Position numbers and translations under genes: made by a program
Origin: Thalia democratica
Taxonomy: Eukaryota
Reading direction: 5' to 3'
NCBI GenBank assembly: GCA_965202585.1
Contig: OZ241830.1
Span: forward strand, 6,324,001 to 6,388,000
Length of the DNA stretch: 64,000 nt
The notes under the pieces: generated by a model
Seen by the model: only the letters and a program-made list of their open reading frames with translations
Database searches by the model: none
Told to the model about the DNA's origin: nothing
Shown: positions 19,001 to 51,500 of the stretch, piece after piece
Layout of the letters: every line of letters begins with the position of its first letter
Numbering within the stretch: position 1 is the stretch's first letter

Positions 19001-20859
19001 GATTCTCATGGACGGTAGCGAGTCCATAAGTGACCAAAACTTCCAGGAGTTGAAGCAATGGACCACAGGTATGATGGAGACTGTCCTTCCCAACCCCAAG
19101 AACATGACCGACCCCTTGAACCTCCAAATCGTTCAGTTTGCACATCAGGTAAATATTTAAAACGAGTGGTAAAAATATTAAACTATATTTTTAACTAGCT
19201 GAAATTTTAAACTTCACTAACTTTTAAATTTAACATTGTTTACTGAACGATTAAAAAGCGCTCAAAATGTTTGTTTCACTTTCGGTTATCTAGTCGTACA
19301 CCACGGATACCTTTTAACTCCAGTACCTTAAGTTGACTAAACAAAATGTAAAAACATAACACATAAAAATAAAAACTTACTTTTTATCTCAAGAAATTTT
19401 TAGATTCAAACAAGAATGTATGCAAAATTTACCTCTTTATCCTCTAAATCGTACAGAACATGTTTGTTTAGCTTTTATTTTTCCAACAGGTTCGAACAGA
19501 GGTGAACACTTACATCTGCAACAACCCCGGCAACGACACGGTGGTGGTGAGCAACTTCCCTGACAACGACCCGCCTAGCAACGCCCCCTCGATACTCCCC
19601 CTCCCCGCATTGTCCCTGGCAAACTGCGAAGATTACTCGAGCGTGAAGAAAACGATTGAGGGGATTTCCCAGTATGAGAGAGGAGGAACGGACATGTGGA
19701 AGGCGCTGGAGTACGTGGATGGGGAAATGGAATACAAGGTTGCCAGGACAACTACTAAAGTGGGGGCTTTTTTATTTGTTTTAAACATACACTGCTTTAG
19801 GAACTGTATTTGAAAAAGTCTACTTTAGGATATTTGTAAAACTATGTTTATTTTAATTTATCTAAGATTGAATATTTCATGCATACAAATAAAACAAATT
19901 TAATCATTTTATTTCTTAATTTTTCAAAGGTGATGATCACAATAACAGACGGAGCTTACGTTGAAGCGACGGATGAAAATAGACGCCTGTTGAACCAACT
20001 TAAACTGAAATTTGATCACATGCTTGCAGTTGGAGTTGGTGAATTTAGTGAGAAAGATTGGAAACAACTGGAAGACCTCACTAAGAATAGCGAGGTTATT
20101 AGTAGTTCTAATGTAACTAATTCTGTGATTTTTTAGTATCTTTCTGACTTATTATTCGTTCTTATCCTGTTAAATTGTATTTCATAAAAATTCTGTTGTA
20201 TACAAATATATATAAATATAATATTTTCAAATAGTAATTAGACATAAAAGTTTTTCAACTTTGTACATTTTATTAAAACTATAAATTAAACACTTTACAT
20301 TAAGTTGTAAAAATATAAAATAACTCATTTAAAGGTTATAAGTGTGATAGGCTTTTTTGTATAAATCATTTTATTTTGCTAATGTGTTTATGTTAAGTCT
20401 AATTTGCGTTTATAGGTAATAAGCGTTAAAGATTACACAAGTTTGAATGAAAACTTCAAGGACATACTGATGACCGTTTGTGAGACTCACGAACCAGAAA
20501 GTTAGTTAACATGTTTAAATATAACTTGTAATAATTTCAATACTTTTTATTGGCTTGTAAACATGTGCTTTGTTTTTTTAATGATAGTAAATCTTTGTTT
20601 TATAAAATTGTACTCTGCATTAAGATAAAGCAACAAAAATATAAATCGATTTTAAAACGTTTAAAAAAAAAAACAAGTTTTTTAAACATCTACAAACTTT
20701 ATTCATAATTATTCTTTTATTTAACTTTCACGATAAACACAAGCAGAATATATATGTAAAACAAAAACAGAACCAAAACCAGAAGAAAGACCTCCTCCGA
20801 GGGGCGACAACCGAAGACGTAGAAGGAGGAGACATGGAAAGATGAACGTGACGTCATAA
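1088..20859 (+). CDS. Gene A: secreted vWA-collagen-vWA-vWA protein (collagen VI alpha1/alpha2-like architecture), ~1096 aa, 34 coding exons
   Basis: Hand-spliced GT-AG exons giving one open frame (sum 3291 nt): 1088-1334, 3255-3397, 3933(alt 3909)-4059, 6089-6138, 6488-6618, 8278-8354, 8483-8550, 8897-8941, 9266-9295, 9360-9413, 9693-9719, 9869-9901, 10186-10257, 10613-10666, 10980-11015, 11412-11456, 11516-11590, 12131-12184, 12616-12660, 12996-13049, 13251-13331, 13648-13731, 14028-14099, 14386-14473, 14768-14809, 16014-16178, 16580-16784, 17905-18045, 18495-18631, 18973-19148, 19490-19759, 19930-20094, 20416-20500, 20747-20859. Signal peptide MLKPSILIFLTTLLILGCHG; vWA motifs DLVILIDSS, LDVVFVIDGS, MDLMILMDGSES, ITITDG, AVGVG; phase-0 Gly-X-Y exons. 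Confidence 0.9.
2642..3150. repeat. Diverged ~260-bp tandem duplication in gene A intron 1
   Basis: aaatcaaactacaaataaatttcacagcattttgttag and aaaagttaaacccaaactcttac each occur twice ~250-270 nt apart. Confidence 0.85.
3255..8550 (+). other. Gene A N-terminal vWA domain (6 exons)
   Basis: DLVILIDSSECFRDQW...FLGGSAFLN...LVLTNGKS...IPVSV; aligns with the gene B N-terminal vWA ([16 protein letters not shown]...FIGQGAYLD...ITLTNGKS...IPVSV) and shares four intron positions and phases with it. Confidence 0.85.
9287..14412 (+). other. Gene A collagen triple-helical region (~274 aa, 16 exons, three short interruptions)
   Basis: Continuous Gly-X-Y across phase-0 exons of 27-84 nt; interruptions GEPSEG, GDKSDIPG, GQLSTAPG; one Gly-Cys-Cys triplet at 12140-12148. 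Confidence 0.9.
14281..14365. repeat. Three short copies of actaacttagttttt upstream of a gene A acceptor
   Basis: (a/t)ctaacttagtttt at ~14285, ~14319, ~14352; each carries a branch-point-like CTAAC. Confidence 0.7.
16014..20500 (+). other. Gene A two C-terminal vWA domains
   Basis: LDVVFVIDGSDP...MLITIVDG (16014-18631) and MDLMILMDGSES...KVMITITDG...MLAVGVGE (18973-20500), each preceded by Cys-rich linkers. Confidence 0.88.
16732..16978. repeat. Two decayed intronic copies of the 3' end of exon 16580-16784 plus its donor
   Basis: atcatgggtattcagcagattggaggggcaacaaccataatgcctgtgttgaagtaaat is re-found, diverged, at ~16829-16888 and ~16920-16978. Confidence 0.85.
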
Positions 20860-23800
20860 AGAGAAAATTTAATGTGACGTCACAATTATATCAAAATTAG
20901 TAAGCGCTGTACAACGTACTAACCCATTTGAAAATTTTCAATAACAATCTTTTTAAAACAACAATTAAATTTTACGTTAATCAATTAACAGTATTACAGA
21001 ACAACTAATTTAGTTTTTTAATTATTAAAAATGTTTTTAAGCATGACTTTTTTTTCCGCTTTATTTCTTGACACCATGAATACTATTTTGTACTTTTTTT
21101 TTTGTTTTTAGAAAACTTTATTTATTCTATGAGCCTCATGTGTATTTTTTTTGTTTTTTGACAAAGTGTTTTTTTTTAACTTTAAAAAAATAAAGTAAGA
21201 ATTGTAAACCTTTAAACAAAATATTATGTAGGTATTGTGTGCACGTAGGTAGACTAACTATTTACTATATTAACGCTTTGAAAACTACTAAAATATATTT
21301 ATTATGATTTAACTTAGTCTGCTTTGAGTAACCTACGAAAAAGTATGGTACAACTTATTTTTAAAACTTATAGTTTTGAAAGCTAACCACACAACAAATA
21401 AGGTAAACATAAAACTAACGACTCACTTAAAACATATATACATGAAACTATATTTGTACAACTTTGTTAAACAACAAGTATATTTAATTAAAAACAGTTA
21501 AGATTATTTTACAAAGCGGTTATACAATGTCAAATATAAAAACTTAATTCTTTTAAATTAAATCAGTTATGACATAAATACTGTTTGTTAGGTTTTAAAG
21601 TTTTAATACAGATTAATTTGAATAAAAAAAAAGTTATATAACTTAGCATTTCATAATTACTTGTAATTTTATTTACTACTAGTATGTAAAAAACTTGAAT
21701 GTGTTTTATCATATATAGTATACATTTCGTTTGTATATAAAAGCTAAGTGTTATAAAACCGCTTATAGTAAATAAATTTCGATATAAAGTTTACATAAAA
21801 ACATTTAATGGGTCTAACAGTTTACAAATTAGTGAAATTAATTGTCAGCATTTAACAACTTTATACTAATGGTCAATAACAAATAAGTTTATTAACAAAA
21901 TTAAATTAAACTTAACACTATGTTTATTGTAAATATACAAAAAGATTAACAAAAAATATGTAAATTGTATTCCATAAAATATGTTATAGTTTTGTAAGAT
22001 AACTATAAAACATTTAAAATATAATCACTTAATAAAACTATATCAAATTTACTTTAATATTTGATATTATTTAGAAAAATAGCGAGTGGAAAGATTTGTT
22101 TTATAAAACTAAATTATAATTAAAAGTTATAAAACGCGTTTTCGGTTATTATTTTTAATATTGATAATAAAACAATCGATAAATCTCAAAAATATTATAG
22201 TTTTAGTAAAAAAATAACTTCAATACGGCTTTTCAAAAGTTTTGGCAATATATAAGAAAATTAAATTATAATCAATTATTTTCCACTTTGCTTTACACTA
22301 ACAAAAATACCATAAATAAATATACAGTGTATAAAAGGAATGTCTGTTCATTTCAACAATTCTTACAAAGTTTGTCTTAGAGTTTAGATAAAAACTAAAA
22401 ATTATAATCAATGTGTAAAGAAAGAGTAGTATTTAAAATGAATTTGCTTTAATTATGTCTACAATTAAACTTACAATTATCTTTACTAAACAGTACATTT
22501 TTGTACTTAAAAGTATTTATTTGAAGATAATTGCAACTAAAATGCAACTAAAACAGTTATTTGAACGAAGTAAAAGAAATTTACTTTGTAATAAATGGAC
22601 CATCTGTACTTAACAAGCCTTCAAGAAATAGACAGCAACTTTAAGTAGTACTTCAAACAAGAGAGCAAAGTCTACATGTAGAAGCTTGCGGTCAATTAGC
22701 TATCAGCCGAATTGTGATTAACTAGAATACTTGCTACCAGATTTTAATTGAACTGAATTTGAACCTTTTAGCTAGCATTAAAACGGATTTACTCATAAGA
22801 TGAAAATTATTAAAAATAGGTTTCAGTTAATATCAATGCTTATCAATAAATTTTTGTTTGTTTATGCAAGGATATCAAATTAAATATTAGTCTTCAAAAA
22901 TTAAGTCTGGCAGCAAATTATAAGTATGATGCGATTAATGTTTTTTATCTTTTAGTTTGTTTATTTTTAATATTGATTTCATAGCTGAAAGCTAATTTAG
23001 ATCTGATAATAGAGTCTGACATTAAAAAAAGAACTTAAATATAAGCTCTAATTATCAACAAGCTTTAACATTATTGTCTGACCCTTCTAGACTTAGCTTT
23101 AATATCAATACTTGAATTAGTTAAAAGCAGCTCGTAGATTTATTAGAAAGTCTAATAATATCTGTTTATCAGTTTAATTTTTATTAGTTTTTTAGCTGTA
23201 GTTTGAACGAAAACAAGGTTTATTGGAGTTGTAAAAACTTGTATTTATGTCTTGAAAGTATCCAAACAAACAATTTATCTTTTATAAGTTTCTACTTGAA
23301 CACAGTTTTATATTCACAAAAAGTATATATCAGAAAATATACAGAAAAGCTCTTTTTTTAATGTTTATTTAAATTAGGAAACTTATCAAGTAAATAATTG
23401 ATTTTATTATAAACTAAGTTTTATATTTTTGAACTTAACTTTGTTTAAAATGAAAAAAAAACAGTTTATGCTATCTATACTAGTTCAGTGTTTTTTATTT
23501 TAATGCAATTTAGTACTAATAGTTTAAAAACAAGCCACTTCTTTATACTGTATATGATAAATTAAAACTTTGTTAAAGGACATCAAGTAACAACTTTCAA
23601 CTGTATTGAAACTAATTTAAATGGATAGAAAGAAAATTTTGTTAATGAAAAGAAAATATAGTAAAAAGTACGTATATAGACGTTAAACGTATTTCTATTG
23701 AAAATTTTAAGATTTTTTTCAATACTATGTAAGTCTAACTTTTATGTCTACGTCGATTTACTATAAATTATACCTTACATATTTCTCGAAAAGTTTGTAT

Positions 23801-38300: not shown

Positions 38301-41300
38301 TTTTCAGGCGGTGAGTTTGAAGTTCTTACTTGATATGGCACCAAGAATAATCAACAAAGAATCAAAATTCCATACTTTTATTTTTATTCATCTCTTTTTA
38401 AACTTTCGTTTTATTTGTTTTCAAAACAAAAGCATAAAACCATAGAAAATTATATAAATGAAAGTGTTTCAAACCAATGATTGAGCATAAAATCTTTATT
38501 TTTAAATGATTACTTTTACCATAGAATATTAAAACTTTTAAACTTTAAAACAAATGTACTTAAAAAAACTTGTTAAAACTCAAACAGTTATTTTTTATGC
38601 TTTAATGAACATTTAAAAAAATTTTCCCTTTACACAAAAGATGATCAAAGGAAATGCCCCAGAGCAACTTGTGGACCAGTGCAGACAGTGCAACTGCACC
38701 TGCGACCTTCCGGTTGGACCCAAGGGAGATAAGGGTGACAAGGGAGACTCCGTAAAGGTTCATAATAAATAGTTGAATATATAATGAAAAAATGTTAAAT
38801 AATTAATTAAGTATTATAAACTAATTGAATTAAAAAAAAAGAAATTGATGTCTTTTTAGTTTCTTCAAATTCTAAACCATATGAAAACTAAATATATAAA
38901 ACTTTTGTTGTACGTTGCTATGCACTTCTAATCACGTGTTTTTTGTTGCCAGGGAGAAAAAGGAGAACCAGGTAACGATGGTGTTGACGGTATTGACGGT
39001 TTGGCCGGACCCAAGGTAAATTTTTTATTTATACATAAAATACATGTACACTGTTTTGTTTGAATTGAAATAATACTTATTTATTATAAAGCTCTTTAAA
39101 AGAAGTTAAAATATTAAAAGATTTTATTTTTAAAACATATTATTTAAACTTACAAAATATTTTCTTCTTGATTTAAATTAAGATACTTCATTACTGTTTG
39201 TTATAATTATCAAACTAATAAAGTAATAAAATTTTACAGGGAGAAACTGGAGAGCCAGTAAGTTTTAAATTTTTATTGTTTATAAACAATCTCAATATAA
39301 AAAACAAATACAATATTGCAGTATTAGTTGTTTTTTTGTTTTTTATTCAATCTATCATTAATCTTATTTTATAACACTCAACACAATAATAAATCTTAAA
39401 CTTGTCCACAATAGTTGTCTAAAGTTTTCAAAATTTATCATTCAGCAGAAACAACTATTAAAAAAATAATAAATCTATCAAAACAGTTTAACAGCTGCAC
39501 AAAAGATGCCATTTACATTTGTCATTGCAGCAATACATCATTATGTAAAAAAAAATAATAAATCTTTTAAATGTTGCAACATCCAAAACAATACACAAAC
39601 AAACGAATTTTCTTACAAAAACACGTTTTCAAGTTCAGACGTTTTTGTGAGCGCCACATCGGGTGCTTTAACATTTGAAAAAAAACACAAAAGACTTGGT
39701 TCCATTGTTGTGCTTGATTGATGTGCTTTTCTGCTAAATCGGGGCGACTTTTGCCTAATCCATCATTATTTCATAGTAATTTTCATTTTATTTTATTTTA
39801 TTTTTTCTACAGGGTGTGCAAGGCGAAAAAGGAGACGAAGGCGAACAGGTAAGAATATTTAATAAACGGTTATTATTATTTGTTGTTTGTTCATTTTAAT
39901 AATATTTTTATTTTTTCTTCACAGGGTGTACCTGGCAAACAAGGAGAACCAGGCGAGAGAGTGAGTTGTTGTTATATAAAAAATATAATTTATTAATGTA
40001 TTAATGAATATATTTTTACCCTAAAAATATAACTTATATGCATTTATTCTATTAAAGTTTATTAAAAAATACTTATAAGGCAACTTTTAATGCAAACAAA
40101 CACTTATTTCAAATTCAATGAGCTAAAAAAACAAAATTGTATATTCTAAATTTTAGAACTTATTCTTTACATTTAAAATTTTATTAAATGATAAAAGCAG
40201 ACTTATTTTTCTATTATTATTAAACGCTTTAAAGTCTATCACTTCATAAACTGACGCACGACAATGATTAATTATTTAATAATAAATCCGACAATTTATG
40301 CCCTTTCAGTTCCTTTGATCTTTTATTCGAAGCTCTAATTGAATAAGTATGTAAGCAAGATTAAAAATAGATTTTTGTGCAACAAAAGTCGTGACGGACA
40401 CGAGTTTTGTCTGGACTTTTTGTTTGTGACGTCACAACTTAAACATGTTTCGAACATCAAAGAGCGAATTGCAACAGAACAATAATTTAAAACCCCCGAT
40501 TAACCATTTATTGTTAACATTTGCGCAATAATTGAGCTTTCAACATCAATTGCAACGTTTTTAAAAGTTAATATCTTGCATTATTCTTGTATTATGACGT
40601 CACAAAAAAAAAACATATTAACTCTTCGTTATGACTAACTGATTTGCTTCTTTGAAGGGCAAAACCGGAAAGACCGGACCCGAGGGACCGCAGGGCGAAA
40701 AGGGCGAGCAAGGCGATCAGGGCGAGGTCGGACCGGAGGGACCCGAGGGCAAGAAGGGAGACCAAGGAGACGAAGGCGAGAGGGGCGCGCCAGGAAAAGA
40801 CGGTTTGGACGGTATCGATGGACAGAAGGGTGCACAGGGCGAGGAAGGACCACAAGGTGAACCCGGTATCGGTATCAAGGTAAGTTAAACAAATGTTAAG
40901 TTAAGTCCAGGAAGTTTATAACTAATTGGTGGTTTTAAGTTATATAAATGCTGAATAATTTGCACAGCGTTAATAACTTTTTAAAGTTTTAAAATTTATG
41001 AAAAAAAGACTAAAGTGAATAATAATAAGCTGCCTTCAAAATTTTTTACAAACTAAAATGTAATTTTTAAAAGAAGAAAACTATTTTGTTATTACTTACA
41101 GGGAGACCAAGGAGAAAAGGGAGACCAAGGTCCCCAGGGACCCGAAGGAGAAATGGGTCCCGACGGAAACGACGGTCCCAGAGGTAAGCAGGGTCTGTGC
41201 GGCGCCCCCGGCCCTGCAGGCATGAAGGGAGAAAGAGGTGCGACGGGAGAAGACGGCAGCAACGGAGTGGCCGGTCCCGAGGGACAGCAGGGTCCAAGGG

Positions 41301-44300
41301 GATTCCCGGGCGTCCAGGGCATGGAAGGAAAGAGAGGCGAGCCCGGCAGGGACGGAGCGCAGGGCGAGCAGGGTCTGACCGGAGAGAGGGGACCCCGCGG
41401 TCGCGAGGGAGTCGCCGGCATGAAGGGAGAAAAGGGAGAGCCTTCTAACGTTGCAGGACCTCAAGGACCCGAGGGGGTGTCAGGCGCGAGGGGACCCAGA
41501 GGAGTGTCAGGTAACGACGGTTTGGACGGAGCACAGGGCGCACCTGGTGTGCAAGGACCAAGAGTGAGTTGGAATTAAATTGATATTTTTTATATATATT
41601 TTACTTTGTATTATTTGTAGGGACCAAGAGGAGAAAAGGGTGAATGCACCGGAATCGACTTTGAGGAGTTCAGAGCGAAGATCGTCGAAATCATCAGAGA
41701 CCTGATGCCTTCTGGTTAGCATGAGTATTAGAAAAAAATTATAATTAAGAAAAGTAAATGTCTTTGAACTATAACTAAAATTTGTTATTTTTTACAGAAT
41801 GCGGTAAGTGAATTGTGCATAGAAGTTTTGGAATACAGTAAGATCAAGCATGCTTTTTTACTTTGCTTTTTGTAGTTTTAAAATGTTAAACTTGAGACTT
41901 CACTCAAAAACATTTTGAAACGGTTTATTCAAAGTAAATTTTTTAATATAAAATTTATCCAATTTAAATTTTTTAAAGTCTCAACGGCTTAATGCTTAAT
42001 TTCGCTACGAGTAGTTAAAACATTTTGTAATTTAAAAAACAAATTGCTTAGCAAAAAAATTCCAAAAAAAAAAATTGGTGAACAAACATTCGATTTGGGG
42101 ACTTATATTTTTCAATATGTAAACAATTTGGTGCTTTGATTTATCGAAATTGTCATGACAACAGCCAACAGCAACCAGGAGCCGACTCCCCCGCCAAAAT
42201 GCAGCATCCGTTACCCCATCGACCTGGTCTTCCTCGTGGACGGCTCCCACTCGATCCCCGCCGGAGACTTCATCACCCTGAAGAAGTGGATCATAGACGT
42301 GGTCGAGACCTTCAAGCCTTCCCAGATCGAGATCCCGTTGTACCTGAACATCGTGCAGTTCTTCGGCGACATCAGGCAGGAGGTCAGGGACACCATCTGC
42401 ACCGATGACGTCAAAGACAACTGTCAGGAGCTCGATGACGTCAGGAGGCAGATCGCCGCCATCAGGAAGGGCGGCAGGGGAACCTCGACCTGGTCGGGGC
42501 TGGCTTACGTGGTTGACAACGTGGGCGCCACCTTGAGGCGTGACTCCCAGAAGGTCCTCATCACCATCACGGACGGGTCCCCGTCGGACGACGAGAACCT
42601 CGAAGCGCTGGACAGCGCCAAGGAGATCTTCGACCAGATGTTTGCCGTCGGCGTGGGCGAGGACCTGAACAAGAACATCCTGTCCATGCTGTCCAAGGAC
42701 GAGCCCATCCACGTGTCGGACTTCAGCGCTCTTGACGCCGTCATCGAGAGGATGACCAGCAAGATCTGCAACGAGATCGAGTCCCACATCTTAGGTAACT
42801 AGATCCAAGTAGCAATCAGAAATGTTTTGAGGGCTTTGATAATTGAGGCTGTGAAAAGAAAAAAAGTTTGAACAAAACTGCTGTGCTCCTTTTGAATGAC
42901 GTAGAAATAAAATGCAATCAAAAATGTTTTAGAGGCTGAGTATAGATGCTTTTAATTTAGGCTGGTATGAATCGTTGAATGACTTTAAGTATGCAATCAA
43001 AAGTAATGCAAAATGGTTTAATTTGCCAACTTTAGGCTGCCAGAATTAGTTGGTGAGCTTTTACGAAAGCATGATAAAATATTCTACTCAGAACAAAGAG
43101 AAATTAAGCAACCATAAATAAGTCTTTTAATTTGCATCATATTGGCTGACTCTGCTTTTGAAATCTTCTTTTTCTTGCCCTAAATTGGAATGAACCTTTA
43201 GTTTATCAGTTTTAAGATATAGTGTGTATACCCTGGCTGAAAGCTAAGTCCATTGAAAAATTATGGCACAAAATGGTGTGTCGTTCAGCTTAAATAAAAC
43301 TAGTGGCTGTTTTCCTTTTAAATAAACGTTAAAATCAGTTTTACAAGTAATGCTTTTTCGTTGGAATTTGATTTCTGATATTCATAAACCAAGTGTTTTT
43401 AATAAATACTTGATTTCATAAAATTATTGTTAATTAGGCAAATTTTAGATGTAAAGATTTGAATTTGATTTGTACAAAACGTAGTTTACAGTTAAATGAA
43501 AAATCTTTGAGTTTCAACATGACGCCTTAGTGAATAAGAAAAAACCTAATTTTCATTTTAAAATTTAACTTTTTACTTTGACAAATTTTGAACAAAGCAA
43601 ACTTCTATGAATATGTTTAATTTAATGAAGTTATGTTGTGTAATTACAACAAAACTTATCTGTTTTCTCAACCAAGCTGCGAATTTTTAAAAGAGAAATC
43701 TCGTTAAGCAAATGAGCATGAAAAACTAAGCAATCAAAATACAATTACATTTGCTGAACAAATCCTAATTGACATGAGAAATCATTGCAACTTTGTGCAA
43801 AAGGCTTTGCAACTTAATAAACAAAGCTTCCAACAGTGCTTACTTTTTTTTTGTAGATCAGGCTTTTTACTTAATTTCTTAAACAAATATCTTTGCTTTG
43901 CAGTTTATAGAAAATTTCTGAGCTTTTATTATTTTGCTTTTTTCGATGCTTACTTATTTATTTTAGCTGTTTTTCTTTGTGTTAATTTTTTTATCTAATC
44001 AATTTTTATTTTAACAGCTAACGAAGAACACGCTGATGAAATAGGTGAGTAAAATTTTTTTATTATTTTGAATGCATTTTATTTTCATTAAAATTTTATT
44101 TTAAATATTATTTTAAAATCACCACTTAACATGTGTGCCGTTTTTTTTTTTTTGTTTTTTTTCAACTAACAAACAAACTAACACTGCAAACTGTTTTTTC
44201 GAGTCACAACGCAGCGCATGTTAATCGTGACGTCATAATACTTTCGTGTGATATTTAATTATTACGTCACAATGAGTGCTCTTTCGACGTGGTGACGTCA

Positions 44301-47300
44301 TATACGAGCAACTTAATGGAGAAACTTGCAATTGTTTAATTTAATTTAATTTGTTTAATTTGTGTGATGTCACCACCGAAAAAGGAGCCCTTTTTTAAGT
44401 TTCAACGGTGACTCAACTTTCACAGTTTTGCAAAAAAAAATTAAAAGTTTAAAATATTTTTTGAAAATTTATTGAAAATTTTATTAGTTGCTCGTTTCCG
44501 CCGTCACCACGGAAAAAAGGGAAATCACCATGACGACGAGCACGACGAGGAAAATTAAGGGAAATCCCCGCGAATCACGTCATACGATGCATGACGTCAC
44601 AATTTTTTTGGATTGCTTTTATTTTGCATAAATTTTTAGTTTTTTTAATTTCTTCATTTCTTGTCACTTCGACTTCTTTTAATTTCTCGATATTTTTTTA
44701 ATCATCGCTCGGGTTTCGCTCGTTTTTTCTATTCAGGGGACTATTATTTTTACGATGCACATTTTTCCGATAAAATATTCAGCAAGAAGAACCGATCTAA
44801 CTCAATTTTCAAACTAAAAATTCAGCATAGAAAACCAGCGCCTTACGTTGCTCAACAGCAAAGTTTAAAAACGCTCTTATAATCTACCTTAAACAAATAA
44901 ATACCTTTTATTGTAAACAAAAGGTCGCTTTCGAGGCAAGTGGTCCGTTAAAATAGACCACAGGGGAGTTTAAAACTTGTAAACAAACTTTGAAGCGATG
45001 AAGGGAGGCCTTTTAAATTGTCGTTTTAACTTTTACGTAGTCGACAGAGCGTTTAAAATCTTGTTATTTTTGCTGAATCTTTTCAATGCGGGACGCTTGT
45101 AAAACGTGATCTCTTAATTTTTTCGAACTATGCATCAGAGTGCCGATTTGTTAGAAAATCACAAAAAATACTCCAACGTGTTTTTTGTAGGATTTTTGCT
45201 TTATATATATAGATAGACGATAATTTTACTATTATAAGTCAGAAGCCAATTTTGCAGTAGATATTTTCGTCGATAATTAACAGTCGTCGATTGCATTAGA
45301 ACGTTTAATTTTTTTAGCAATTTTTTAAAAGTTGTAATTGCGGGTCCTACTCTTTCAAGTGCTTTTCTTTTATATTCTTTTTCATTTCTTTCTAGTCGTC
45401 TCAGTGCTGATATATAAAACTTTGTAAATACTTTATTACTGAACTTTTACGTTTGTATTTCGCAAATTATTATGCAAATAAACGAGCTACACGATAAAAT
45501 AAACAAAAAGCGTTGTGATTTGAAATAATATTTAAAATAAACAGAGAAATTAACTCCGAGACCCCCTAGTAGAGGCGACACAGTTTAATGAAGTTTTAAT
45601 GGAGATCAGGACATTAAAAGGCCAGATAAATTAGAGTAGAGACTTAATTTTGTATTAATTTGATTCCATTATCATCATCAAATCCGCTTTTTTAGATCTG
45701 CTTTTTTATAGTTTTTTTCACAATAAAACATTGGAAAGATACATGTTTTTTTTTTGTCACGGTTTAAACGGCTTTTAGGTTTGTGTATAAGGAAAAAAGT
45801 ATAAATTAATATACCAAAGTAAAGCCATTACTTTGGAGTATGTGGTTTGTTTAATAAGTATTAAATATGGTGTATAACTGCATTTGATGCAACCTAACCT
45901 TTTCTTGTATTTTAACTTTTTTCTCTTCTAAAATAAATGTCAAATATCAAAAGTTTAAAACTGCTACACTAAAAAAAATGATTGTATAAAAAAGTTAACC
46001 TTTTATTTTCTTGTTTCTTCTTTTTGAAAAAAAACTTTAAAACTACAAGAAAATACTAACTAATAAGGTTTTACAGTCACACATTTATATATATTTTTTG
46101 TGACATTTTTACACCTTTAAGCTGAAACTTTCTGTTTAAAACTTTGCTAACATTGCGGTGTAAAACTGTTAAGCAAATCAATTCAAAACATGTTTTGACA
46201 TGCTTTAAAAGTTTCTTAACAAACTACCTTTAACCCATTTGGTGATTGCTGCGAATTTCGATGACGTCATAAATGCTGCGACATCATTTTGCCGTGACGT
46301 CATTTGTTGCATCTTTGATCTGAAAACTTGGCTGACTGCATTCATCTTTGCGAAAACATTCGAAATTAAACACTCAAATCTTTCAATTTTCAAAGAACAA
46401 GTCACCGAGAACCCGATGATGGACAAGTACAAGGGACGGACGGAGGTCTGCTCCTCCCCGCCACCCACCGGCAACTGTCTCCATGGCAACCAGATGCCGG
46501 TGGGCAAGTGGTACTGGTCCTCGCAGGAGGGGATCTGCATTTACTACAACTACAGGAACTGCCCCGGCTCGAACATATTCGACTCGATGCGGGAGTGCGA
46601 GAACACGTGCAAGAAGATACCCAATAGATACAGTTAGTGTGTGACGTCATAATTGATTAAAGTGTGACGTCATGATACTCAAAGTGTGATGTCGTATTAA
46701 AAGTTAAAATCATCTTATCATCTTTGTTGAGTTTATAAAAACCTTAATTTGCTTAATCATTTTTCAACGTTAGGGCTTAACTAAGTAATTTTAGTTTTTT
46801 TTAACTTAAAAACGTATATTCAAGTTGTACTTTGTATAACGTTTTATAAACGCCTCCTTAAACTCTTTAAACGTGTCCTTAGCCTTGTTAAATGTGAACA
46901 AAACATTGCAGAACTTTTAGCTGCAGATCAGTACACTGTTAAACTTGAGGCAAATTATAAAGTTATCTTAGCTTATGACAACAAAATAAGGTTTAAGTTC
47001 CGCCCAGGAAGAAGCTTGTTTTTCCTAGGTTGATTTACAGCTTGTTTAGATTTAAACCTGTCAGCTTTCATGCATCGCTATTAGGTATTATTACAACTAT
47101 TTTCAAGCTAATTTTGATAAAAATTCTTAAACACATTTTTAACGTTAAAACTTACTACAAGGTTATTGTTACGACGTAGTTTTTAAAGAAAAGTATAAAA
47201 TAGTTTAATACCTGGTCTGAACATTTATGCTATTAAAGTTTTTTACAATTGCGATTTAAGCTAGTCGAAGGGGCAATAAAAAATATTTTTTTTTTATCTA

Positions 47301-48556
47301 ATCTCGAAAACAAATAAAAAGTACAGCCGTAAAAAAACTTTATAAAAACATTTTGTTTTTATTCGGGCGCATTCGAGTTTAAATTCGTAAAACAAACAAG
47401 AGTTTTAAATCTTAAAGCCGTGATCTTTTTAAGCTGAGACACACAGGAAGTGATGGTTACGTCACAAAGGTAAAAAAAAAGCTCGAAATTTAAACTTGAA
47501 AATTTAAATCCCGTTTCAGGCTCAGACAGGGGTCACAGATTAAATTTGCGAGATGCAAACAAGATTATCTACCGTCGATGCGATTGGCCGGTTTCGTTGC
47601 CACGGTAACGTTTTCGTTGCCACGGTAACTTTTTCGTTGCCACGGCGAAATCGTGCCGTTGCTAATCATCTTGTTGCTACGGGCGGCGGATTAGCGTCGC
47701 CCTGAAATCAAAAACGTTTTAATGAAATTTCAAATTTTGCGCGCAACACTCAGATATTATTAAATATTTCTGATAGTTCTGTTTTATGTTTGGTTTTTGC
47801 TTACAAAGTAGTTTGCAGTGTGTTTGCGTTTTAGTTTATTAAAAAAACTTTAAACTTTTTTTTTGGAAAAAATTCAAGACTTTAAAACAAAAACTGCGCG
47901 CGCTTATTATTTTTACTTGCTTCTCATTGGTTTAAAACACGTCACGCTTGACTGCAGTTCCGCTTCCCGCCACCACCACCACGCCCCAACCCACTCCGGA
48001 GATGACGGAGGCCCCGGTGGACGAAGAGGAAGAAATAGGGTTTTTCCCCAATGAGTCTTCAGGGGAATCCCCGGAAGGTTTGTGACGTCACATTTCGCTT
48101 TTGCGGATTAATTTTGCGTAAAAAAAATTTCTAAAGACATTATAGTAAAACAAAAATTTGTAATATTTTAGTGTTTTAAAGTTTTTAAACAAACAAGATT
48201 TTAAAACTTACCAAAAGCTCTTTATAATAGTTAAATTTTTACATTTTTACTTTAAATAGTAAAAATTTTATAACTTCGTCATAGATTCTTTTGTAGACTC
48301 TATGAATTAAAAAAAAATTTGTCGAAAATAGTTTATGTTTAAAGAGTTTTGATCACCAAAAGCTTGCTTGCCACTGTGAAACGGCTTCACTACATATTTA
48401 TTAAAAATAAAATAAACGTTTTTGATAAATTATTCAAACAATGCAGATGAAGAGGAAGTGATTCCCCCCACGGACGACGATGACGTTGACGAGTCCTCGG
48501 GAATTTACTACGCCAGCAACTACTACGACGAGCTCGGAGGAGAAAGAGACTTCTAA
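29377..48556 (+). CDS. Gene B (long isoform): secreted vWA-collagen-vWA-Kunitz protein with acidic tail (collagen XXVIII-like architecture), ~1006 aa, 21 coding exons
   Basis: Hand-spliced exons in one frame (sum 3021 nt): 29377-29584, 32975-33144, 34919-35060, 35868-35914, 36348-36481, 37247-37391, 38308-38310 (candidate microexon), 38641-38751, 38953-39015, 39240-39257, 39813-39848, 39925-39960, 40658-40879, 41102-41563, 41621-41714, 41798-41803 (microexon), 42165-42794, 44018-44044, 46396-46632, 47958-48077, 48447-48556. Signal peptide [22 protein letters not shown]; v[23 protein letters not shown]; six-Cys Kunitz. Confidence 0.85.
34333..34625. repeat. ~85-bp direct repeat ~205 nt apart in gene B intron 2
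   Basis: ccattcaac(a/t)gtgtatttgtat...tattaagccactaggatatctga(t/c)ctatcagt occurs twice. Confidence 0.85.
36155..36370 (+). repeat. Near-perfect 90-bp tandem triplication of the acceptor and first 8 codons of a gene B vWA exon
   Basis: ttttttaaccag-aaaaaagt(a/c)at(c/a)atcacccttac with AG ending at 36167, 36257, 36347; unit exactly 90 nt and stop-free (ORF track 36072-36503). Confidence 0.95.
38716..41647 (+). other. Gene B collagen triple-helical region (~300 aa, two interruptions)
   Basis: Gly-X-Y from GPKGDK to GEKGEC; interruptions GIG and GEPSNVAG; single internal Cys (GLC, 41198-41200). Confidence 0.9.
42165..42794 (+). CDS. Gene B single-exon C-terminal vWA domain with intact MIDAS
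   Basis: [12 protein letters not shown]...GTSTW...ITITDGSP...FAVGVGE; acceptor CAG 42162-42164, donor GTAACT 42795; very high GC3. Confidence 0.9.
44488..44558 (+). CDS. Gene B candidate alternative terminal exon ([23 protein letters not shown]), short isoform ~874 aa
   Basis: Phase-1 acceptor ttttattag at 44487 matches the phase-1 donor at 44045; GC-rich coding-like island in AT-rich intron; resembles the gene A terminus (RRRRHGK); stop followed by TGACGTCA like the other stops. Confidence 0.65.
46396..46632 (+). CDS. Gene B Kunitz/BPTI-domain exon (phase 1-1)
   Basis: C-x8-C-x19-C-x7-C-x11-C-x3-C ([11 protein letters not shown]...[10 protein letters not shown]...NC...[11 protein letters not shown]); acceptor caaag 46395, donor GTTAGT 46633. 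Confidence 0.88.
47444..47700. promoter_or_regulatory. Intronic cluster: ETS site, CRE half-site, inverted CCAAT, tandem RFX X-boxes, GC box
   Basis: CAGGAAGTG 47444-47452; TTACGTCA 47457-47464; ATTGG 47583-47587; GTTGCCACGGTAAC 47596-47609 and 47616-47629, partial 47636-47646; GGGCGG 47681. Confidence 0.55.
47958..48556 (+). CDS. Gene B last two exons: Thr/Pro-rich and highly acidic tail with Ser-Gly and Tyr-Tyr motifs
   Basis: Exon 47958-48077 ([39 protein letters not shown]) and 48447-48556 ([36 protein letters not shown]); phases 1-1 and 1-stop are compatible with the Kunitz donor; not reported by the ORF track. Confidence 0.75.
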
Positions 48557-51500
48557 TTGTGACGTCACCATCAGAAATTGACTCGAAGGAAATCGACATC
48601 ACAGGCCATCATGAAACAAACATACATAATATTTGCTAGCTCTTGATCGGGCTTTTTTATTACGACGAACATAATCAGCATACCTTTTATAGATCCTGAC
48701 CTTTCCTTTTCTGTTTTACAGCAAATTCACCTCATTTTTTTCTGTACTCTAAAAAACAAATAAAATTTAGGCAAACAAGAATTTTTAGAGGCCAAACTGT
48801 TAGTGTTTGAAACATAATCATTAAAAACATCAGTAAGGCAATTTTCTTTGTGTAGCTTCAAATCAGTTAGTCAACTTTTGAAAGTTTTCATTTGACTTTC
48901 TTAGAATGTTTTTGTTTGTTTTATTTTGTGTTTTTTCTCTTGATATGCTGTGCGTCATACTAGTTGTTGGTTTGAGTGTTAATATGGAGCCATTCGAAAT
49001 TATTCTATCAAGTTAATTTTTAAACTAATTTAAAAAATAACCTTTAACCATTTGTTGTGCTCTAAAAAGCTCAGCAATTTTTATAAAGCATGTCAATTTA
49101 TACTGTTTCAAGCTTATTTTTGGTTTAAAATTCATTTTATTTTATAAACAAGTGAAGCTAAGCTTACTAAATTGTTATGCTTTATACGAAATTGCTTCAC
49201 GGAAACGGCTCTTTTTCGAAAAATTGTATTTATATATTTATTGCACTTAAAAAATTCATCTTAAAATATGCTTGTAGTTTTGGATTGCGACTTTTTTTTT
49301 TTGTAAAATTTTTTGGAAATTATACCCGAGTGGCACTTTTTAGATGAGTTAGAATATTCTCACACATTTTATTTTCGCCTTAAGTTTTTTTTGTTTTATC
49401 TTTTTTGTTTTGAGTGTCTTATTTCAAGTGGTTTTTTATGAATCCCACAGTTAAATCGCTTCCAAATAATAAATCAGAATGAAAAAACAAACGTTTGGTC
49501 TTGGTTTTTAAGTGTAAAATTAATTTATTCTTAATTAAAAAAAAGTATTAAAACTTAAAAAAAAGATTTTACATTCTTTAATACCATTAAGTTTAGAAAC
49601 GATTTGTTATTTTGAATACTAAGTTATTGTGAATACTTTATTGTTTATTCTAAAAACTATCAAATTTAGATAATTTTTGTGGTTAGTTTAGTTATAAATA
49701 GTATGAATATACACATAAAACTAATTATCAACTGGTTGCTAAGTATTAAGTTGTATTAGTAACTTTGTTAAGTAATCCCTGTGGAGTAAAAAAAAATTGT
49801 GTTTTTTTTAATGTTACTAGAAATAAATAACTTTAACATCTACTGTAATTCTCATAAACTAGTGTTTAGAAAAATTGAAACTTTATACATTGAATAAAAT
49901 TATAAAGAATCAATATTAAGTTAATAGAAAAACCATAAAGCATAGCTTTAAAAACTTGTAAACACGTTTAATATTGTATTTTTTATTCTAGCAAATATTT
50001 GTCATTAAAAAAGTTATGTACAAACTGTTTACTGCTTAAATGTTGGCATAAGCTTTATAAATCACTTTTGAAAGTTAAGCAAATATTGCAAGGCTAAATC
50101 TTTGACTAAACGTTATTTACATTTCTTTCCTACTGATGTTTTGGAGGTTTATTTTAAATGTCAACTATAAATTTCAGATCAAAAATAACTAGTGTTACAT
50201 TTTATCTAAAAACGATAAAATTAAGACTAAAACAAATGTTTTTTTTTTTGAATTGGTAGCTCATTAAATCATAAAGTGTATTAAAATGACTTTGTTTAAG
50301 TTTTTATAACTTTATGACTTATATTGAAAAAATTAAAGAGTTGTTTATTTGTTTAAAAATACAAAATGCAATGTATAAATGTATACTATAGATCAACTAC
50401 TATATTTTGTATTAAATTTAACTCCTTATTTTATACGAAGTTATTGTTTCTGGTTAATATTTTTAAATATATGAATAACTTTTTTGTTTTATAAAGTACA
50501 ATATTAAAACTTTAAACCTACACCTAACAAATTACTTAACTTATCAGTTTCTTAATTAGTTAATAGTTTTTCAAACTTTGAAAATTATACTAAAAAGATT
50601 TATAAAAAGTAAAACCGTCAGAAAACATCAAATAATTTTGAGTGTTTGAAATTCGCTTTTTGTAATTTCAATTGAGTTATTTTATACAGTTTATTAAAAT
50701 TTGAAATTATTTTCATTGAAACTATCATATCACTGACAGCAAACAATTAAACAAAGCAGAGTTAATAAAGAAGTTGTTTAAACTGTATTTGATTAGCTTA
50801 ATGAACAAAACAAAAACAAACAATAGCGAATCAAAACAATGAAGTTAATTCATCGGTCAATGTTGCATCACAATGCAGCTAGCAGTTCAAACTTTAAATC
50901 CACAGCTTAATAAACACATTTGCAGCCAAGTTTATATTTAGTAATTACTGCATGTTTGAAGTTGTGTATATGTGTCGTTATTTAATTGAGAGCAACTGGT
51001 GTCTGCTCGGAAGCTTCTAGATATAAACATTAGTTCAATAAGGCTAGTGTTTATTAAAGTAGGGTGTATTTTTATTTAAAATTTCTTATCTTTTCTACGT
51101 AATGAGTTTTATTTGCAAATAACACTCGAAATTTAATAAACTCTGTCAAAAGAGTCAAAAATAACTACTTGTTATTATCAAGTTCAATATATTTACAACT
51201 ACAGTTAAATAACAGGTTTTTTTTAAAAACTTTGCAACACTTTACTCAAAGTTGCAACGTTTAGTTTTAAACCATCGTTTTCAATTTCTTAAATAATTTT
51301 ATTAACTAAAGAGATCTTTTAAGTAGCAAGAAAAATATCATATTTATATGAATTTGTAAAAAATAGAAAATTAAATGTTAAGTATTCCATGGGTAATTTG
51401 AATGAAAATGTTTTAGCATTTAACTTTGTTTTCTTCTGCAATTATGTGTGCACAAATCATTTACAGCAAACCAAGTGTAAAATCTTTTATACAACTCAAA

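What the first reader, a model, noticed from the sequence alone, without database searches (positions are those of the whole stretch)
44018..48556. Gene B has alternative C-termini: furin site plus His/acid peptide versus Kunitz plus acidic tail
Seen: after the 27-nt exon 44018-44044, the phase-1 donor can join 44488 ([23 protein letters not shown]) or 46396 (Kunitz) and then 47958 and 48447. The Kunitz and Thr/Pro exons are both phase 1-1 and individually skippable. RFRRHHGK resembles gene A's RRRRHGK end, suggesting the short exon is the ancestral terminus. Established: RXRR is a furin site; collagen VI alpha3 sheds its Kunitz-containing C-terminus proteolytically. Inference: here the presence of Kunitz is set by alternative last-exon choice, and the short form could release a 17-aa His/Asp/Glu-rich, potentially metal-binding peptide.
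Basis: partly seen in the sequence, partly recalled or inferred. Interest (0 to 1): 0.75.

Follow-up and report, generated by a model that had tools for sequence, protein, structure and literature searches.

The report
Salp collagen gene with alternative tails
A collagen-VI-like matrix gene of a marine salp really does end in several different ways (a short basic/histidine-rich tail, an RGD tail, a Kunitz protease-inhibitor module, or an acidic tail) chosen by RNA splicing, a well-supported but fairly ordinary case of modular alternative splicing.

Summary
Marine metatranscriptome contigs join donor 44044 to 44488 in all four runs laid. They cover a ~950-nt 3'UTR that ends near 45509, behind AATAAA signals and beside one A-run.

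Transcript contigs confirm the isoforms in the window's species or a very close one and in relatives. The short tail recurs in three further relatives with RFRR invariant. HHDDEHDEE is kept in the two closer ones; a more distant one ends RFRRSYGLK. A still more distant ortholog also has short, Kunitz and acidic endings. The Kunitz exon is under purifying selection (dN/dS 0.10). The C-terminal VWA exon and the 27-nt exon are also skippable.

- **Not shown:** furin cleavage, peptide release, metal binding, the 46632>47958 junction, and that the short exon is the ancestral end.
- **Known parallels:** human COL6A2 alternative last exons, the APP Kunitz cassette, and convertase cleavage after C1 of collagen VI alpha3.
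- **Verdict:** a real, conserved new member of a known kind, of moderate interest.

The parts
42165..42794 (+). C-terminal VWA exon of gene B (630 nt, phase 1-1). It is constitutive in most transcripts and skipped in P0159 and P0156.
   Evidence: Pfam VWA, E 1.2e-20. Borders come from L010 and L008. Skipping is seen in L009/P0159 and P0156.
44018..44044 (+). 27-nt exon (ANEEHADEI, phase 1-1) whose donor is the branch point for all alternative endings.
   Evidence: Sequence and joints. It is present in L008, L009 and L010, and skipped in relative P0164.
44488..44558 (+). Coding part of the short alternative last exon: [23 protein letters not shown] plus stop. It contains an RFRR convertase-type motif.
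   Evidence: Joint 44044>44488 in four runs. The orthologous full-length transcript L008/P0006 carries it. Only 3 of 72 nt differ from L008, against about 14% in the VWA exon.
44559..45509 (+). 3'UTR of the short form, with AATAAA at 45477 and 45498 and a poly(A) site near 45509.
   Evidence: Contig cover in all four runs, a depth drop after 45500 and an A9 loose end in X3. PAS scan. It is 75-98% identical per 100 nt to the L008 UTR, and 98% in the last 90 nt.
45545..45588 (+). Coding part of a fourth, minor terminal exon: [14 protein letters not shown] plus stop (RGD ending). ATTAAA at 45613 and AATAAA at 45722 lie downstream.
   Evidence: Joint 44044>45545 in X2. Transcript L009/P0159 ends with this exon. 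Translation.
46396..46632 (+). Kunitz cassette exon (237 nt, phase 1-1). It has six Cys, P1 Leu, and a 4-residue insertion between Cys2 and Cys3.
   Evidence: Pfam PF00014 at 33.2 bits. PDB relatives are boophilin, APP KPI and COL6A3 C5. Joint 44044>46396 in X2. P0001/L006 includes it. dN/dS is 0.10.
47958..48077 (+). Thr/Pro-rich and acidic cassette exon (120 nt, phase 1-1).
   Evidence: Joints 44044>47958 and 48077>48447. Present in L010/P0160 and absent from P0001 of a relative.
48447..48556 (+). Coding part of the distal last exon: an acidic tail with the PPTDDDD, SG and YY motifs.
   Evidence: joints and L010. The PPTDD...SG...Y pattern is kept in P0001, P0104 and the distant ortholog P0098.
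48557..49487 (+). 3'UTR of the long forms (at least 930 nt).
   Evidence: L010 aligns to 49456 at 99%. L006 aligns to 49487 at 84%.
20771..20860 (+). Predicted last exon of the upstream paralog, gene A: KPKPEERPPPRGDNRRRRRRRHGKMNVTS plus stop. It is used here for comparison only.
   Evidence: Sequence reading only. No RNA evidence was obtained.

Best explanation
Gene B (about 29.3-49.5 kb, + strand) encodes a secreted collagen-VI-like chain: signal peptide, VWA domain, a 301-residue triple helix, VWA domain, then a variable tail.

Everything after the helix is built from phase-1 symmetric exons, namely VWA, the 27-nt exon, Kunitz and Thr/Pro. There are also three terminal exons. The 44488 exon has a poly(A) site supported by reads, and the 48447 exon has a long 3'UTR seen in transcripts. 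The 45545 exon has only candidate poly(A) signals downstream.

SHOWN:
- Splicing from donor 44044 to 44488, 45545, 46396 or 47958 gives at least four C-termini: (i) basic/His-acid, (ii) RGD, (iii) Kunitz plus acidic, (iv) Thr/Pro plus acidic.
- (i) and (iv) are the common forms; (ii) and (iii) are minor.
- The layout of a short end, a Kunitz end and an acidic end is conserved in orthologs down to 34% VWA identity.

INFERRED (about 45% likely): the invariant RFRR, which begins 12 residues after the VWA exon, is cut by a furin-type convertase in the secretory pathway. This would parallel the convertase cut between C1 and C2 of vertebrate alpha3(VI). The cut would trim the chain and shed a variable C-peptide. 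The conserved function is more likely the cut or the basic site than the released His/Asp/Glu peptide.
For: - Joints and UTR cover in four marine metatranscriptomes.
- Transcript contigs of the window's species or a very close one: L010/P0160 (97-99% nt) with Thr/Pro plus acidic, and L009/P0159 (94-98% nt) with the RGD end.
- Relatives: L008/P0006 and P0157/P0161/P0164 carry the short form. P0104 carries Thr/Pro plus acidic in the same species as P0157. P0001/L006 carries Kunitz plus acidic.
- P0168 (53% VWA identity) ends ...SRFRRSYGLK. The P0098 group (32-34%) has a 12-aa short end, a Kunitz form and an acidic end.
- P0168 and P0098 hit gene B best in the window's genome, so they are orthologs and not paralogs.
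- Kunitz exon dN/dS is 0.10, equal to the VWA exon.
- The short exon is 96% identical in nucleotides to L008, against 86% for the VWA exon.
- A poly(A) signal cluster lies at 45477, 45498 and 45536.
- A convertase cut between C1 and C2 of alpha3(VI) is described in PMC7319802.
Against: - All RNA evidence is assembled contigs from mixed plankton samples. Depths cannot rank isoforms, and every joint from the 27-nt exon has a short anchor (27 nt or less).
- The Kunitz and RGD joints appear in only one run each, though each has an independent transcript contig.
- The 46632 donor's partner is not seen in the window's species.
- Poly(A) at 45509 rests on one contig with nine As. The relative's contig L008 runs on to the equivalent of about 45547.
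- Nothing shows cleavage at RFRR. P1' is His in three species. The most distant ortholog's short end has no RFRR.
Confidence: 0.85

Rival explanations
1. The short tail is not cleaved. The RFRRHHGKK cluster is a glycosaminoglycan-, tunic-polysaccharide- or metal-binding patch. The point of choosing this exon is to replace the strongly acidic or Kunitz end with a basic/His end, which changes matrix interactions.
For: The sequence is a dense basic cluster followed by His/Asp/Glu. HHDDEHDEE is invariant in the window and two relatives, which is unexpected for a discarded propeptide. The exon is conserved even at synonymous sites.
Against: A more distant ortholog keeps RFRR but replaces the rest with SYGLK. 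Exposed R-X-R-R in a secreted protein's tail is a typical convertase substrate (general knowledge).
Confidence: 0.4
2. One reading: the short RFRR exon is the ancestral terminus shared with gene A, and the Kunitz and acidic exons were added later.
For: Gene A's predicted end, RRRRRRRHGK, resembles RFRRHHGKK. The RFRR..G.K pattern is also present in P0168.
Against: DNA alignment of gene A's last exon to 44440-44640 scores at shuffle level, apart from a shared TGACGTCACAATT. Gene A's exon shares RPPPRGD with gene B's other short exon (RPPSRGD), so the correspondence is ambiguous. The most distant ortholog has Kunitz and acidic ends but no RFRR. Gene A's exon has no RNA support here.
Confidence: 0.25
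3. The different endings belong to different species in the plankton samples and are not alternative splicing within one species.
For: The runs are metatranscriptomes holding contigs 90-99% alike. The database isoforms come from several species.
Against: In run X1 a short-form contig (2 differences in 228 nt) and a Thr/Pro-to-last-exon contig (1 difference in 376 nt) both match the window at about 99%. P0157 (short) and P0104 (Thr/Pro plus acidic) share the species-specific ICNEIHHHILANEEHAEAV signature. All the exons lie in one genome.
Confidence: 0.03
4. The short form is noise from premature intronic polyadenylation and has no function.
For: The introns are AT-rich and full of AATAAA-like words.
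Against: It was found in every run laid. It occurs in full-length contigs of two further species, and a more distant relative has an RFRR short end. Its peptide is conserved and the exon is 96% identical in nucleotides.
Confidence: 0.02

Closest known systems
Human COL6A2 alternative last exons (isoforms 2C2, 2C2a, 2C2a')
   Same: A collagen VI chain whose C-terminal end is set by a choice among three last exons, each with its own poly(A) site. The short endings replace a larger module (PMC10965357).
   Different: In COL6A2 the choice swaps the C2 VWA domain for short peptides. Here the choice comes after the only C-terminal VWA domain. It swaps a basic/His tail, an RGD tail, a Kunitz module and an acidic tail, and cassette exons add further combinations.
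Collagen VI alpha3 C-terminus (C2-C5, Kunitz C5 / endotrophin)
   Same: A VWA collagen with a C-terminal Kunitz domain. A furin-like convertase site lies just after the first C-terminal VWA domain (C1/C2), and C-terminal fragments are released (PMC7319802). COL6A3 C5 is among the closest solved Kunitz relatives.
   Different: In alpha3(VI) the Kunitz domain is always encoded and is removed by proteolysis. Here its presence is decided by splicing, and it is in the minority of transcripts. Cleavage at RFRR is not shown.
APP (and APLP2) KPI cassette exon
   Same: A Kunitz domain carried on one symmetric exon that is included or skipped (APP770/751 against APP695; PMC6138354).
   Different: A different protein family. 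In APP the cassette is internal to a membrane protein, not part of a choice among C-termini.
Collagen XXVIII (VWA - collagen - VWA - Kunitz; from my own knowledge)
   Same: The Kunitz isoform of gene B has the same domain order.
   Different: Gene B's helix has 301 residues with 3 interruptions. Collagen XXVIII's is much longer and heavily interrupted. The solved chains closest in sequence, apart from fibrillar collagens and one fibril protein matching through the helix, are collagen VI.

Membership tests
Collagen VI-like VWA collagens | N-terminal VWA, short triple helix and C-terminal VWA in one secreted chain | tested here: met
   Pfam VWA and Collagen on the exons. The precomputed Pfam order on full-length P0006/P0160 is VWA, Collagen, VWA. 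The N-terminal hydrophobic signal-like sequence was read from P0160.
Collagen VI-like VWA collagens | Triple helix of 335-336 residues (vertebrate alpha1-3(VI); figure from my own knowledge) | tested here: not met
   The helix of P0160 has 301 residues, three interruptions and one Cys at helix position 172.
Collagen VI-like VWA collagens | Closest solved relatives are collagen VI chains, aligned across the helix and the C1 VWA domain | tested here: met
   9han chains alpha3, alpha1 and alpha2(VI) score E 4e-58 to 5e-36. The alignments run from the helix into the VWA domain. Fibrillar collagens score higher, but only through the helix.
Collagen VI-like VWA collagens | Heterotrimer and beaded microfibril assembly | not testable with these tools
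   Only the tandem paralog gene A, upstream on the same strand, hints at partner chains.
Kunitz/BPTI domain | Pfam PF00014 above the gathering score, with six cysteines in the Kunitz order | tested here: met
   33.2 bits against 21. Spacing is C-8-C-19-C-7-C-11-C-3-C, with a 4-residue insertion relative to APP KPI and boophilin.
Kunitz/BPTI domain | Serine-protease inhibition through the P1 loop | not testable with these tools
   P1 is Leu and the FxYGGC motif is replaced by YYNYRNC (sequence). Purifying selection (dN/dS 0.10) argues for some function.
Proprotein-convertase (furin-type) substrates | R-X-[K/R]-R motif in an exposed part of a secretory protein | tested here: met
   RFRR begins 12 residues after the VWA exon. 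It is invariant in the window, P0006, P0157 and P0168.
Proprotein-convertase (furin-type) substrates | Actual cleavage after the motif | not testable with these tools
   No proteomic data are available.
Alternative last exon (splicing-coupled alternative polyadenylation) | Own 3' splice site, own stop codon and own poly(A) signal/site, used in competition with downstream exons from one donor | tested here: met
   Joints from donor 44044 to four acceptors. AATAAA at 45477 and 45498 and an A-run at 45509. The transcript contigs L008, L009 and L010 end in the three different terminal exons.

The most novel reading that the evidence does not exclude
The tail of this collagen may be a conserved four-way switch that gives one structural chain four different activities:
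- a convertase-released His/Asp/Glu-rich, metal-binding matrikine, as a splicing-gated counterpart of endotrophin;
- an integrin-binding RGD end;
- a protease-inhibitor end;
- a sulfated or glycanated acidic end.

Each ending might be used in a different salp tissue or life-cycle generation.
Probability: 0.12. Interest if true: 0.6.

Novelty: new member of a known kind. Interest (0 to 1): 0.38.

Why it matters
- **Evolutionary context.** In a tunicate relative of vertebrate collagen VI/XXVIII, the Kunitz module is included or left out by RNA splicing. Vertebrates shed it by proteolysis (endotrophin, collagen VII NC2). This bears on how the Kunitz-bearing collagen C-termini arose.
- **Annotation.** The locus gets a transcript-backed gene model with 22 exons. 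These include 3-nt and 6-nt microexons, three terminal exons and several cassettes, which automatic annotation would probably miss.
- **Testable leads.** The invariant RFRR just after the last VWA domain, and the alternative RGD end, are concrete hypotheses about matrix assembly in salps.

Tried and rejected
- **The search for related loci, VWA exon against metagenome contigs:** 76 pattern hits, none a relative. That collection does not seem to hold the metatranscriptomes carrying these transcripts.
- **Own-genome DNA search with the short exon:** only the locus itself, so no paralogous copy.
- **Own-genome search with the VWA exon:** only distant VWA genes at 26-31% identity.
- **Local DNA alignment of gene A's last exon to both short exons of gene B:** scores within the shuffle range. 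Homology rests only on short peptide motifs.
- **blastx of gene A against all fetched proteins:** no gene A ortholog. Gene A's terminal exon therefore stays unverified.
- **Second homolog search with the Kunitz-plus-tail part of P0001:** found only itself. The partner of donor 46632 in the window's species is still unknown.
- **P0104:** no contig on record.
- **Rfam on 42.8-49.6 kb:** nothing.
- **Direct repeats among the tail exons:** only AT-rich chance pairs.
- **Amidation reading (His-Gly-Lys-Lys as an amidation signal):** rejected, because the dibasic pair is not kept (GIR in a third species).
- **Heumüller et al. 2019 (PMC6746452):** not held. Its result is cited through the review PMC7319802.
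- **Contig depths:** used only qualitatively, because the tool warns they cannot rank isoforms.
Full report
**1. What is in the sequence**

The window is AT-rich (22-30% GC) with GC-rich exons. Earlier notes of this scan call the genome a salp. I did not verify that independently. It fits the fact that the RNA holders are marine metatranscriptomes.

- The 27-nt exon 44018-44044 (…aacag|CTAACG…AAATAG|gtgagt) ends in phase 1.
- Joined to 44488 it reads [23 protein letters not shown], with the stop at 44556-44558.
- Joined to 46396 it opens a 237-nt exon that Pfam calls Kunitz_BPTI (33.2 bits, cut-off 21). Its donor is A|GTTAGT at 46632.
- 47958-48077 (120 nt) is Thr/Pro-rich and acidic.
- 48447-48556 ends the frame.
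- The preceding VWA exon is 42165-42794 (630 nt).
- All internal tail exons are phase 1-1.

**2. Is it used?**

One run search found five marine RNA runs holding 7-14% of the sampled words. I laid four of them on 42701-48700. The GT..AG joints were:

| Joint | Runs |
|---|---|
| 42794>44018 | X1, X3 |
| 44044>44488 | all four |
| 44044>47958 | X1, X2, X5 |
| 44044>46396 | X2 only |
| 44044>45545 | X2 only |
| 48077>48447 | all four |

- In each run, the contigs together cover most of 44485 to about 45509.
- In X2 the depth falls about 35-fold after 45500.
- One X3 contig continues with nine As behind 45509.
- AATAAA lies at 45477 and 45498.

Introns carry only low depth, so the signal is spliced RNA and not contaminating DNA.

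**3. Independent transcript contigs**

An exhaustive protein search with the VWA exon, followed by a cluster listing, returned metatranscriptome-derived proteins. I read these and mapped their contigs.

Window's species or a very close one:
- L010/P0160 (929 aa, 97-99% nt): …VWA, 27-nt exon, Thr/Pro, acidic end. Its 3'UTR reaches at least 49456.
- L009/P0159 (657 aa, 94-98% nt): skips the VWA exon and ends [23 protein letters not shown].
- P0156 (716 aa, a close relative or variant): skips the VWA exon and ends Thr/Pro plus acidic.

Relatives:
- L008/P0006 (876 aa, 95% aa, 86-90% nt) is a full-length short form ending [23 protein letters not shown]. Its roughly 1-kb UTR aligns to 44559-45547.
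- A third species (P0157, P0161, P0164) ends [24 protein letters not shown]0164 also skips the 27-nt exon.
- P0104, with the same species signature as P0157, carries Thr/Pro plus acidic.
- P0001/L006 (90% aa) carries the Kunitz exon joined directly to the acidic last exon, without Thr/Pro.

Two species therefore show more than one ending each. This rules out the idea that the endings are merely species differences.

**4. Depth of conservation**

- P0168 (53% VWA identity) ends …VTSRFRRSYGLK.
- The P0098 group (32-34% VWA identity) comes as four forms. These are an acidic end with or without a 14-aa exon, a Kunitz form with the same unusual 19-residue Cys2-Cys3 loop, and a 12-aa short end GRDMARSDETAP.
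- Both groups hit gene B best in the window's own genome, so they are orthologs.

The three-way layout of a short, a Kunitz and an acidic end is therefore old. RFRR is invariant across the window and three relatives. The His/Asp/Glu stretch is kept only in the window and the two closer relatives.

Against L006, the Kunitz exon has dN/dS 0.10, the same as the VWA exon, with dS 0.61. Against L008, the short exon differs at 3 of 72 nt (1 synonymous, 2 not), whereas the VWA exon differs at about 14%. Constraint on the nucleotides themselves is common in alternative exons. The last 90 nt of the short form's UTR, which hold the poly(A) signals and the 45545 acceptor, are 98% identical.

**5. What the gene is**

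P0160 has this order: signal peptide, VWA domain, a Cys-rich junction, a 301-residue Gly-X-Y helix, a Cys junction, VWA domain, then the tail. The helix has three interruptions and one Cys. Among solved structures, the hits that span the helix and the following VWA domain are collagen VI alpha3, alpha1 and alpha2 (9han).

The helix length does not match the 335-336 residues of vertebrate collagen VI (my knowledge). It also does not match the long, interrupted helix of collagen XXVIII, whose domain order the Kunitz isoform copies. I therefore call it collagen-VI-like, not a member of either type.

The Kunitz domain is closest to boophilin, APP KPI and COL6A3 C5. It has Leu at P1.

**6. How it most likely works**

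Shown:
- One strong donor (AG|GTGAGT at 44044) competes for four acceptors.
- Two of these open short terminal exons. The 44488 exon has read-supported polyadenylation; the 45545 exon has only candidate signals downstream.
- The other two open cassette exons that lead to the distal terminal exon.
- By presence across runs, and roughly by contig depth, the short form and the Thr/Pro-acidic form are the common ones. The Kunitz and RGD forms are minor. Depth of contigs is a poor measure, as the tool itself warns.

Inferred:
- RFRR fits R-X-[K/R]-R and begins 12 residues behind the VWA exon.
- In vertebrate alpha3(VI), a furin-like convertase cuts between C1 and C2, the same relative position (PMC7319802).
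- Because RFRR is invariant while the downstream peptide varies (HHGKKGN…, SYGLK; in gene A HGKMNVTS), the conserved feature looks like the basic site and not the peptide.
- I put cleavage at about 45%. An uncleaved basic/His binding patch is about as likely.
- Metal binding by the 17-mer is untested.
- The acidic tail keeps PPTDD, Ser-Gly and Tyr next to acidic residues in all orthologs. This suggests glycanation or tyrosine sulfation, again by inference only.

**7. The 'ancestral terminus' claim**

Gene A's last exon is predicted from sequence only (20771-20860). It reads KPKPEERPPPRGDNRRRRRRRHGKMNVTS.
- It shares RRRRHGK with gene B's 44488 exon.
- It also shares RPPxRGD with gene B's 45545 exon.
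- DNA alignments are at shuffle level.
- No gene A transcript was found among the fetched proteins.
- The most distant ortholog lacks RFRR but has the Kunitz and acidic ends.

The direction of evolution cannot be told.

**8. Comparison and novelty**

Three known systems cover the principles:
- Human COL6A2 uses three alternative last exons, 2C2, 2C2a and 2C2a' (PMC10965357).
- APP includes or skips a one-exon Kunitz domain (PMC6138354).
- Alpha3(VI) sheds its Kunitz-bearing C-terminus through BMP-1 and convertases.

The salp gene combines these in one tail and decides Kunitz presence by splicing. It is a new member of a known kind. The finding is solid, conserved and useful for annotation and for collagen VI/XXVIII evolution, but not surprising in mechanism.

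**9. Limits**

- All RNA evidence is assembled contigs from mixed samples.
- The 46632>47958 junction, the 3' end of the RGD exon and any protein-level event remain open.

Noticed in passing
window 44592, 48560, 46642, 46665, 48083, 44228, 44293, 46262, 46295, 40427, 40595, 20849, 20875, 1344, 1372: There are 17 TGACGTCA copies, and I estimate about 0.3 expected by chance. They cluster around the tail exons. Most lie just outside coding sequence: 4-34 nt after both stop codons of gene B, 6-33 nt after the Kunitz and Thr/Pro donors, 100-200 nt upstream of alternative acceptors, and over gene A's predicted stop. The two post-stop copies are conserved in the related species' transcripts L008 and L006. 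Earlier scan notes describe the motif as exon-confined; here it flanks exons and sits in 3'UTRs.
   Followed up: partly
window 41797-41802: A 6-nt microexon AATGCG (…acag|AATGCG|gtaagt) supplies Glu-Cys between the helix and the C-terminal VWA domain. It is present in transcripts L010 and L009. This supports first-stage note s1-301456.
   Followed up: yes
window 38308-38310: A 3-nt microexon GCG (…ttcag|GCG|gtgagt) supplies one Ala. All three transcript contigs read CTTAAA-GCG-ATGATC. This supports first-stage note s1-301542.
   Followed up: yes
window 42165-42794: The whole C-terminal VWA exon is skipped in frame in two transcript-derived proteins, P0159 and P0156. Such chains would lack the domain that collagen VI chains use for chain association. 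Function or noise is unknown.
   Followed up: partly
No contig with the 30- or 60-aa insertion was seen.
   Followed up: partly
window 20771-20860 and 45545-45588: Gene A's predicted last exon and gene B's minor terminal exon share RPP(P/S)RGD. An RGD at the very C-terminus of two paralogous collagen chains may be an integrin-binding end. My rough estimate for such a match arising by chance is about 1e-3, made post hoc.
   Followed up: partly
window 44559-45547 and 48557-49487: Both 3'UTRs (about 0.95 kb each) are 81-84% identical to related species whose coding dS is about 0.6 (L006). The peaks are 92-98% right after the stop and at the poly(A) signals. This suggests regulatory content in the UTRs.
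   Followed up: no
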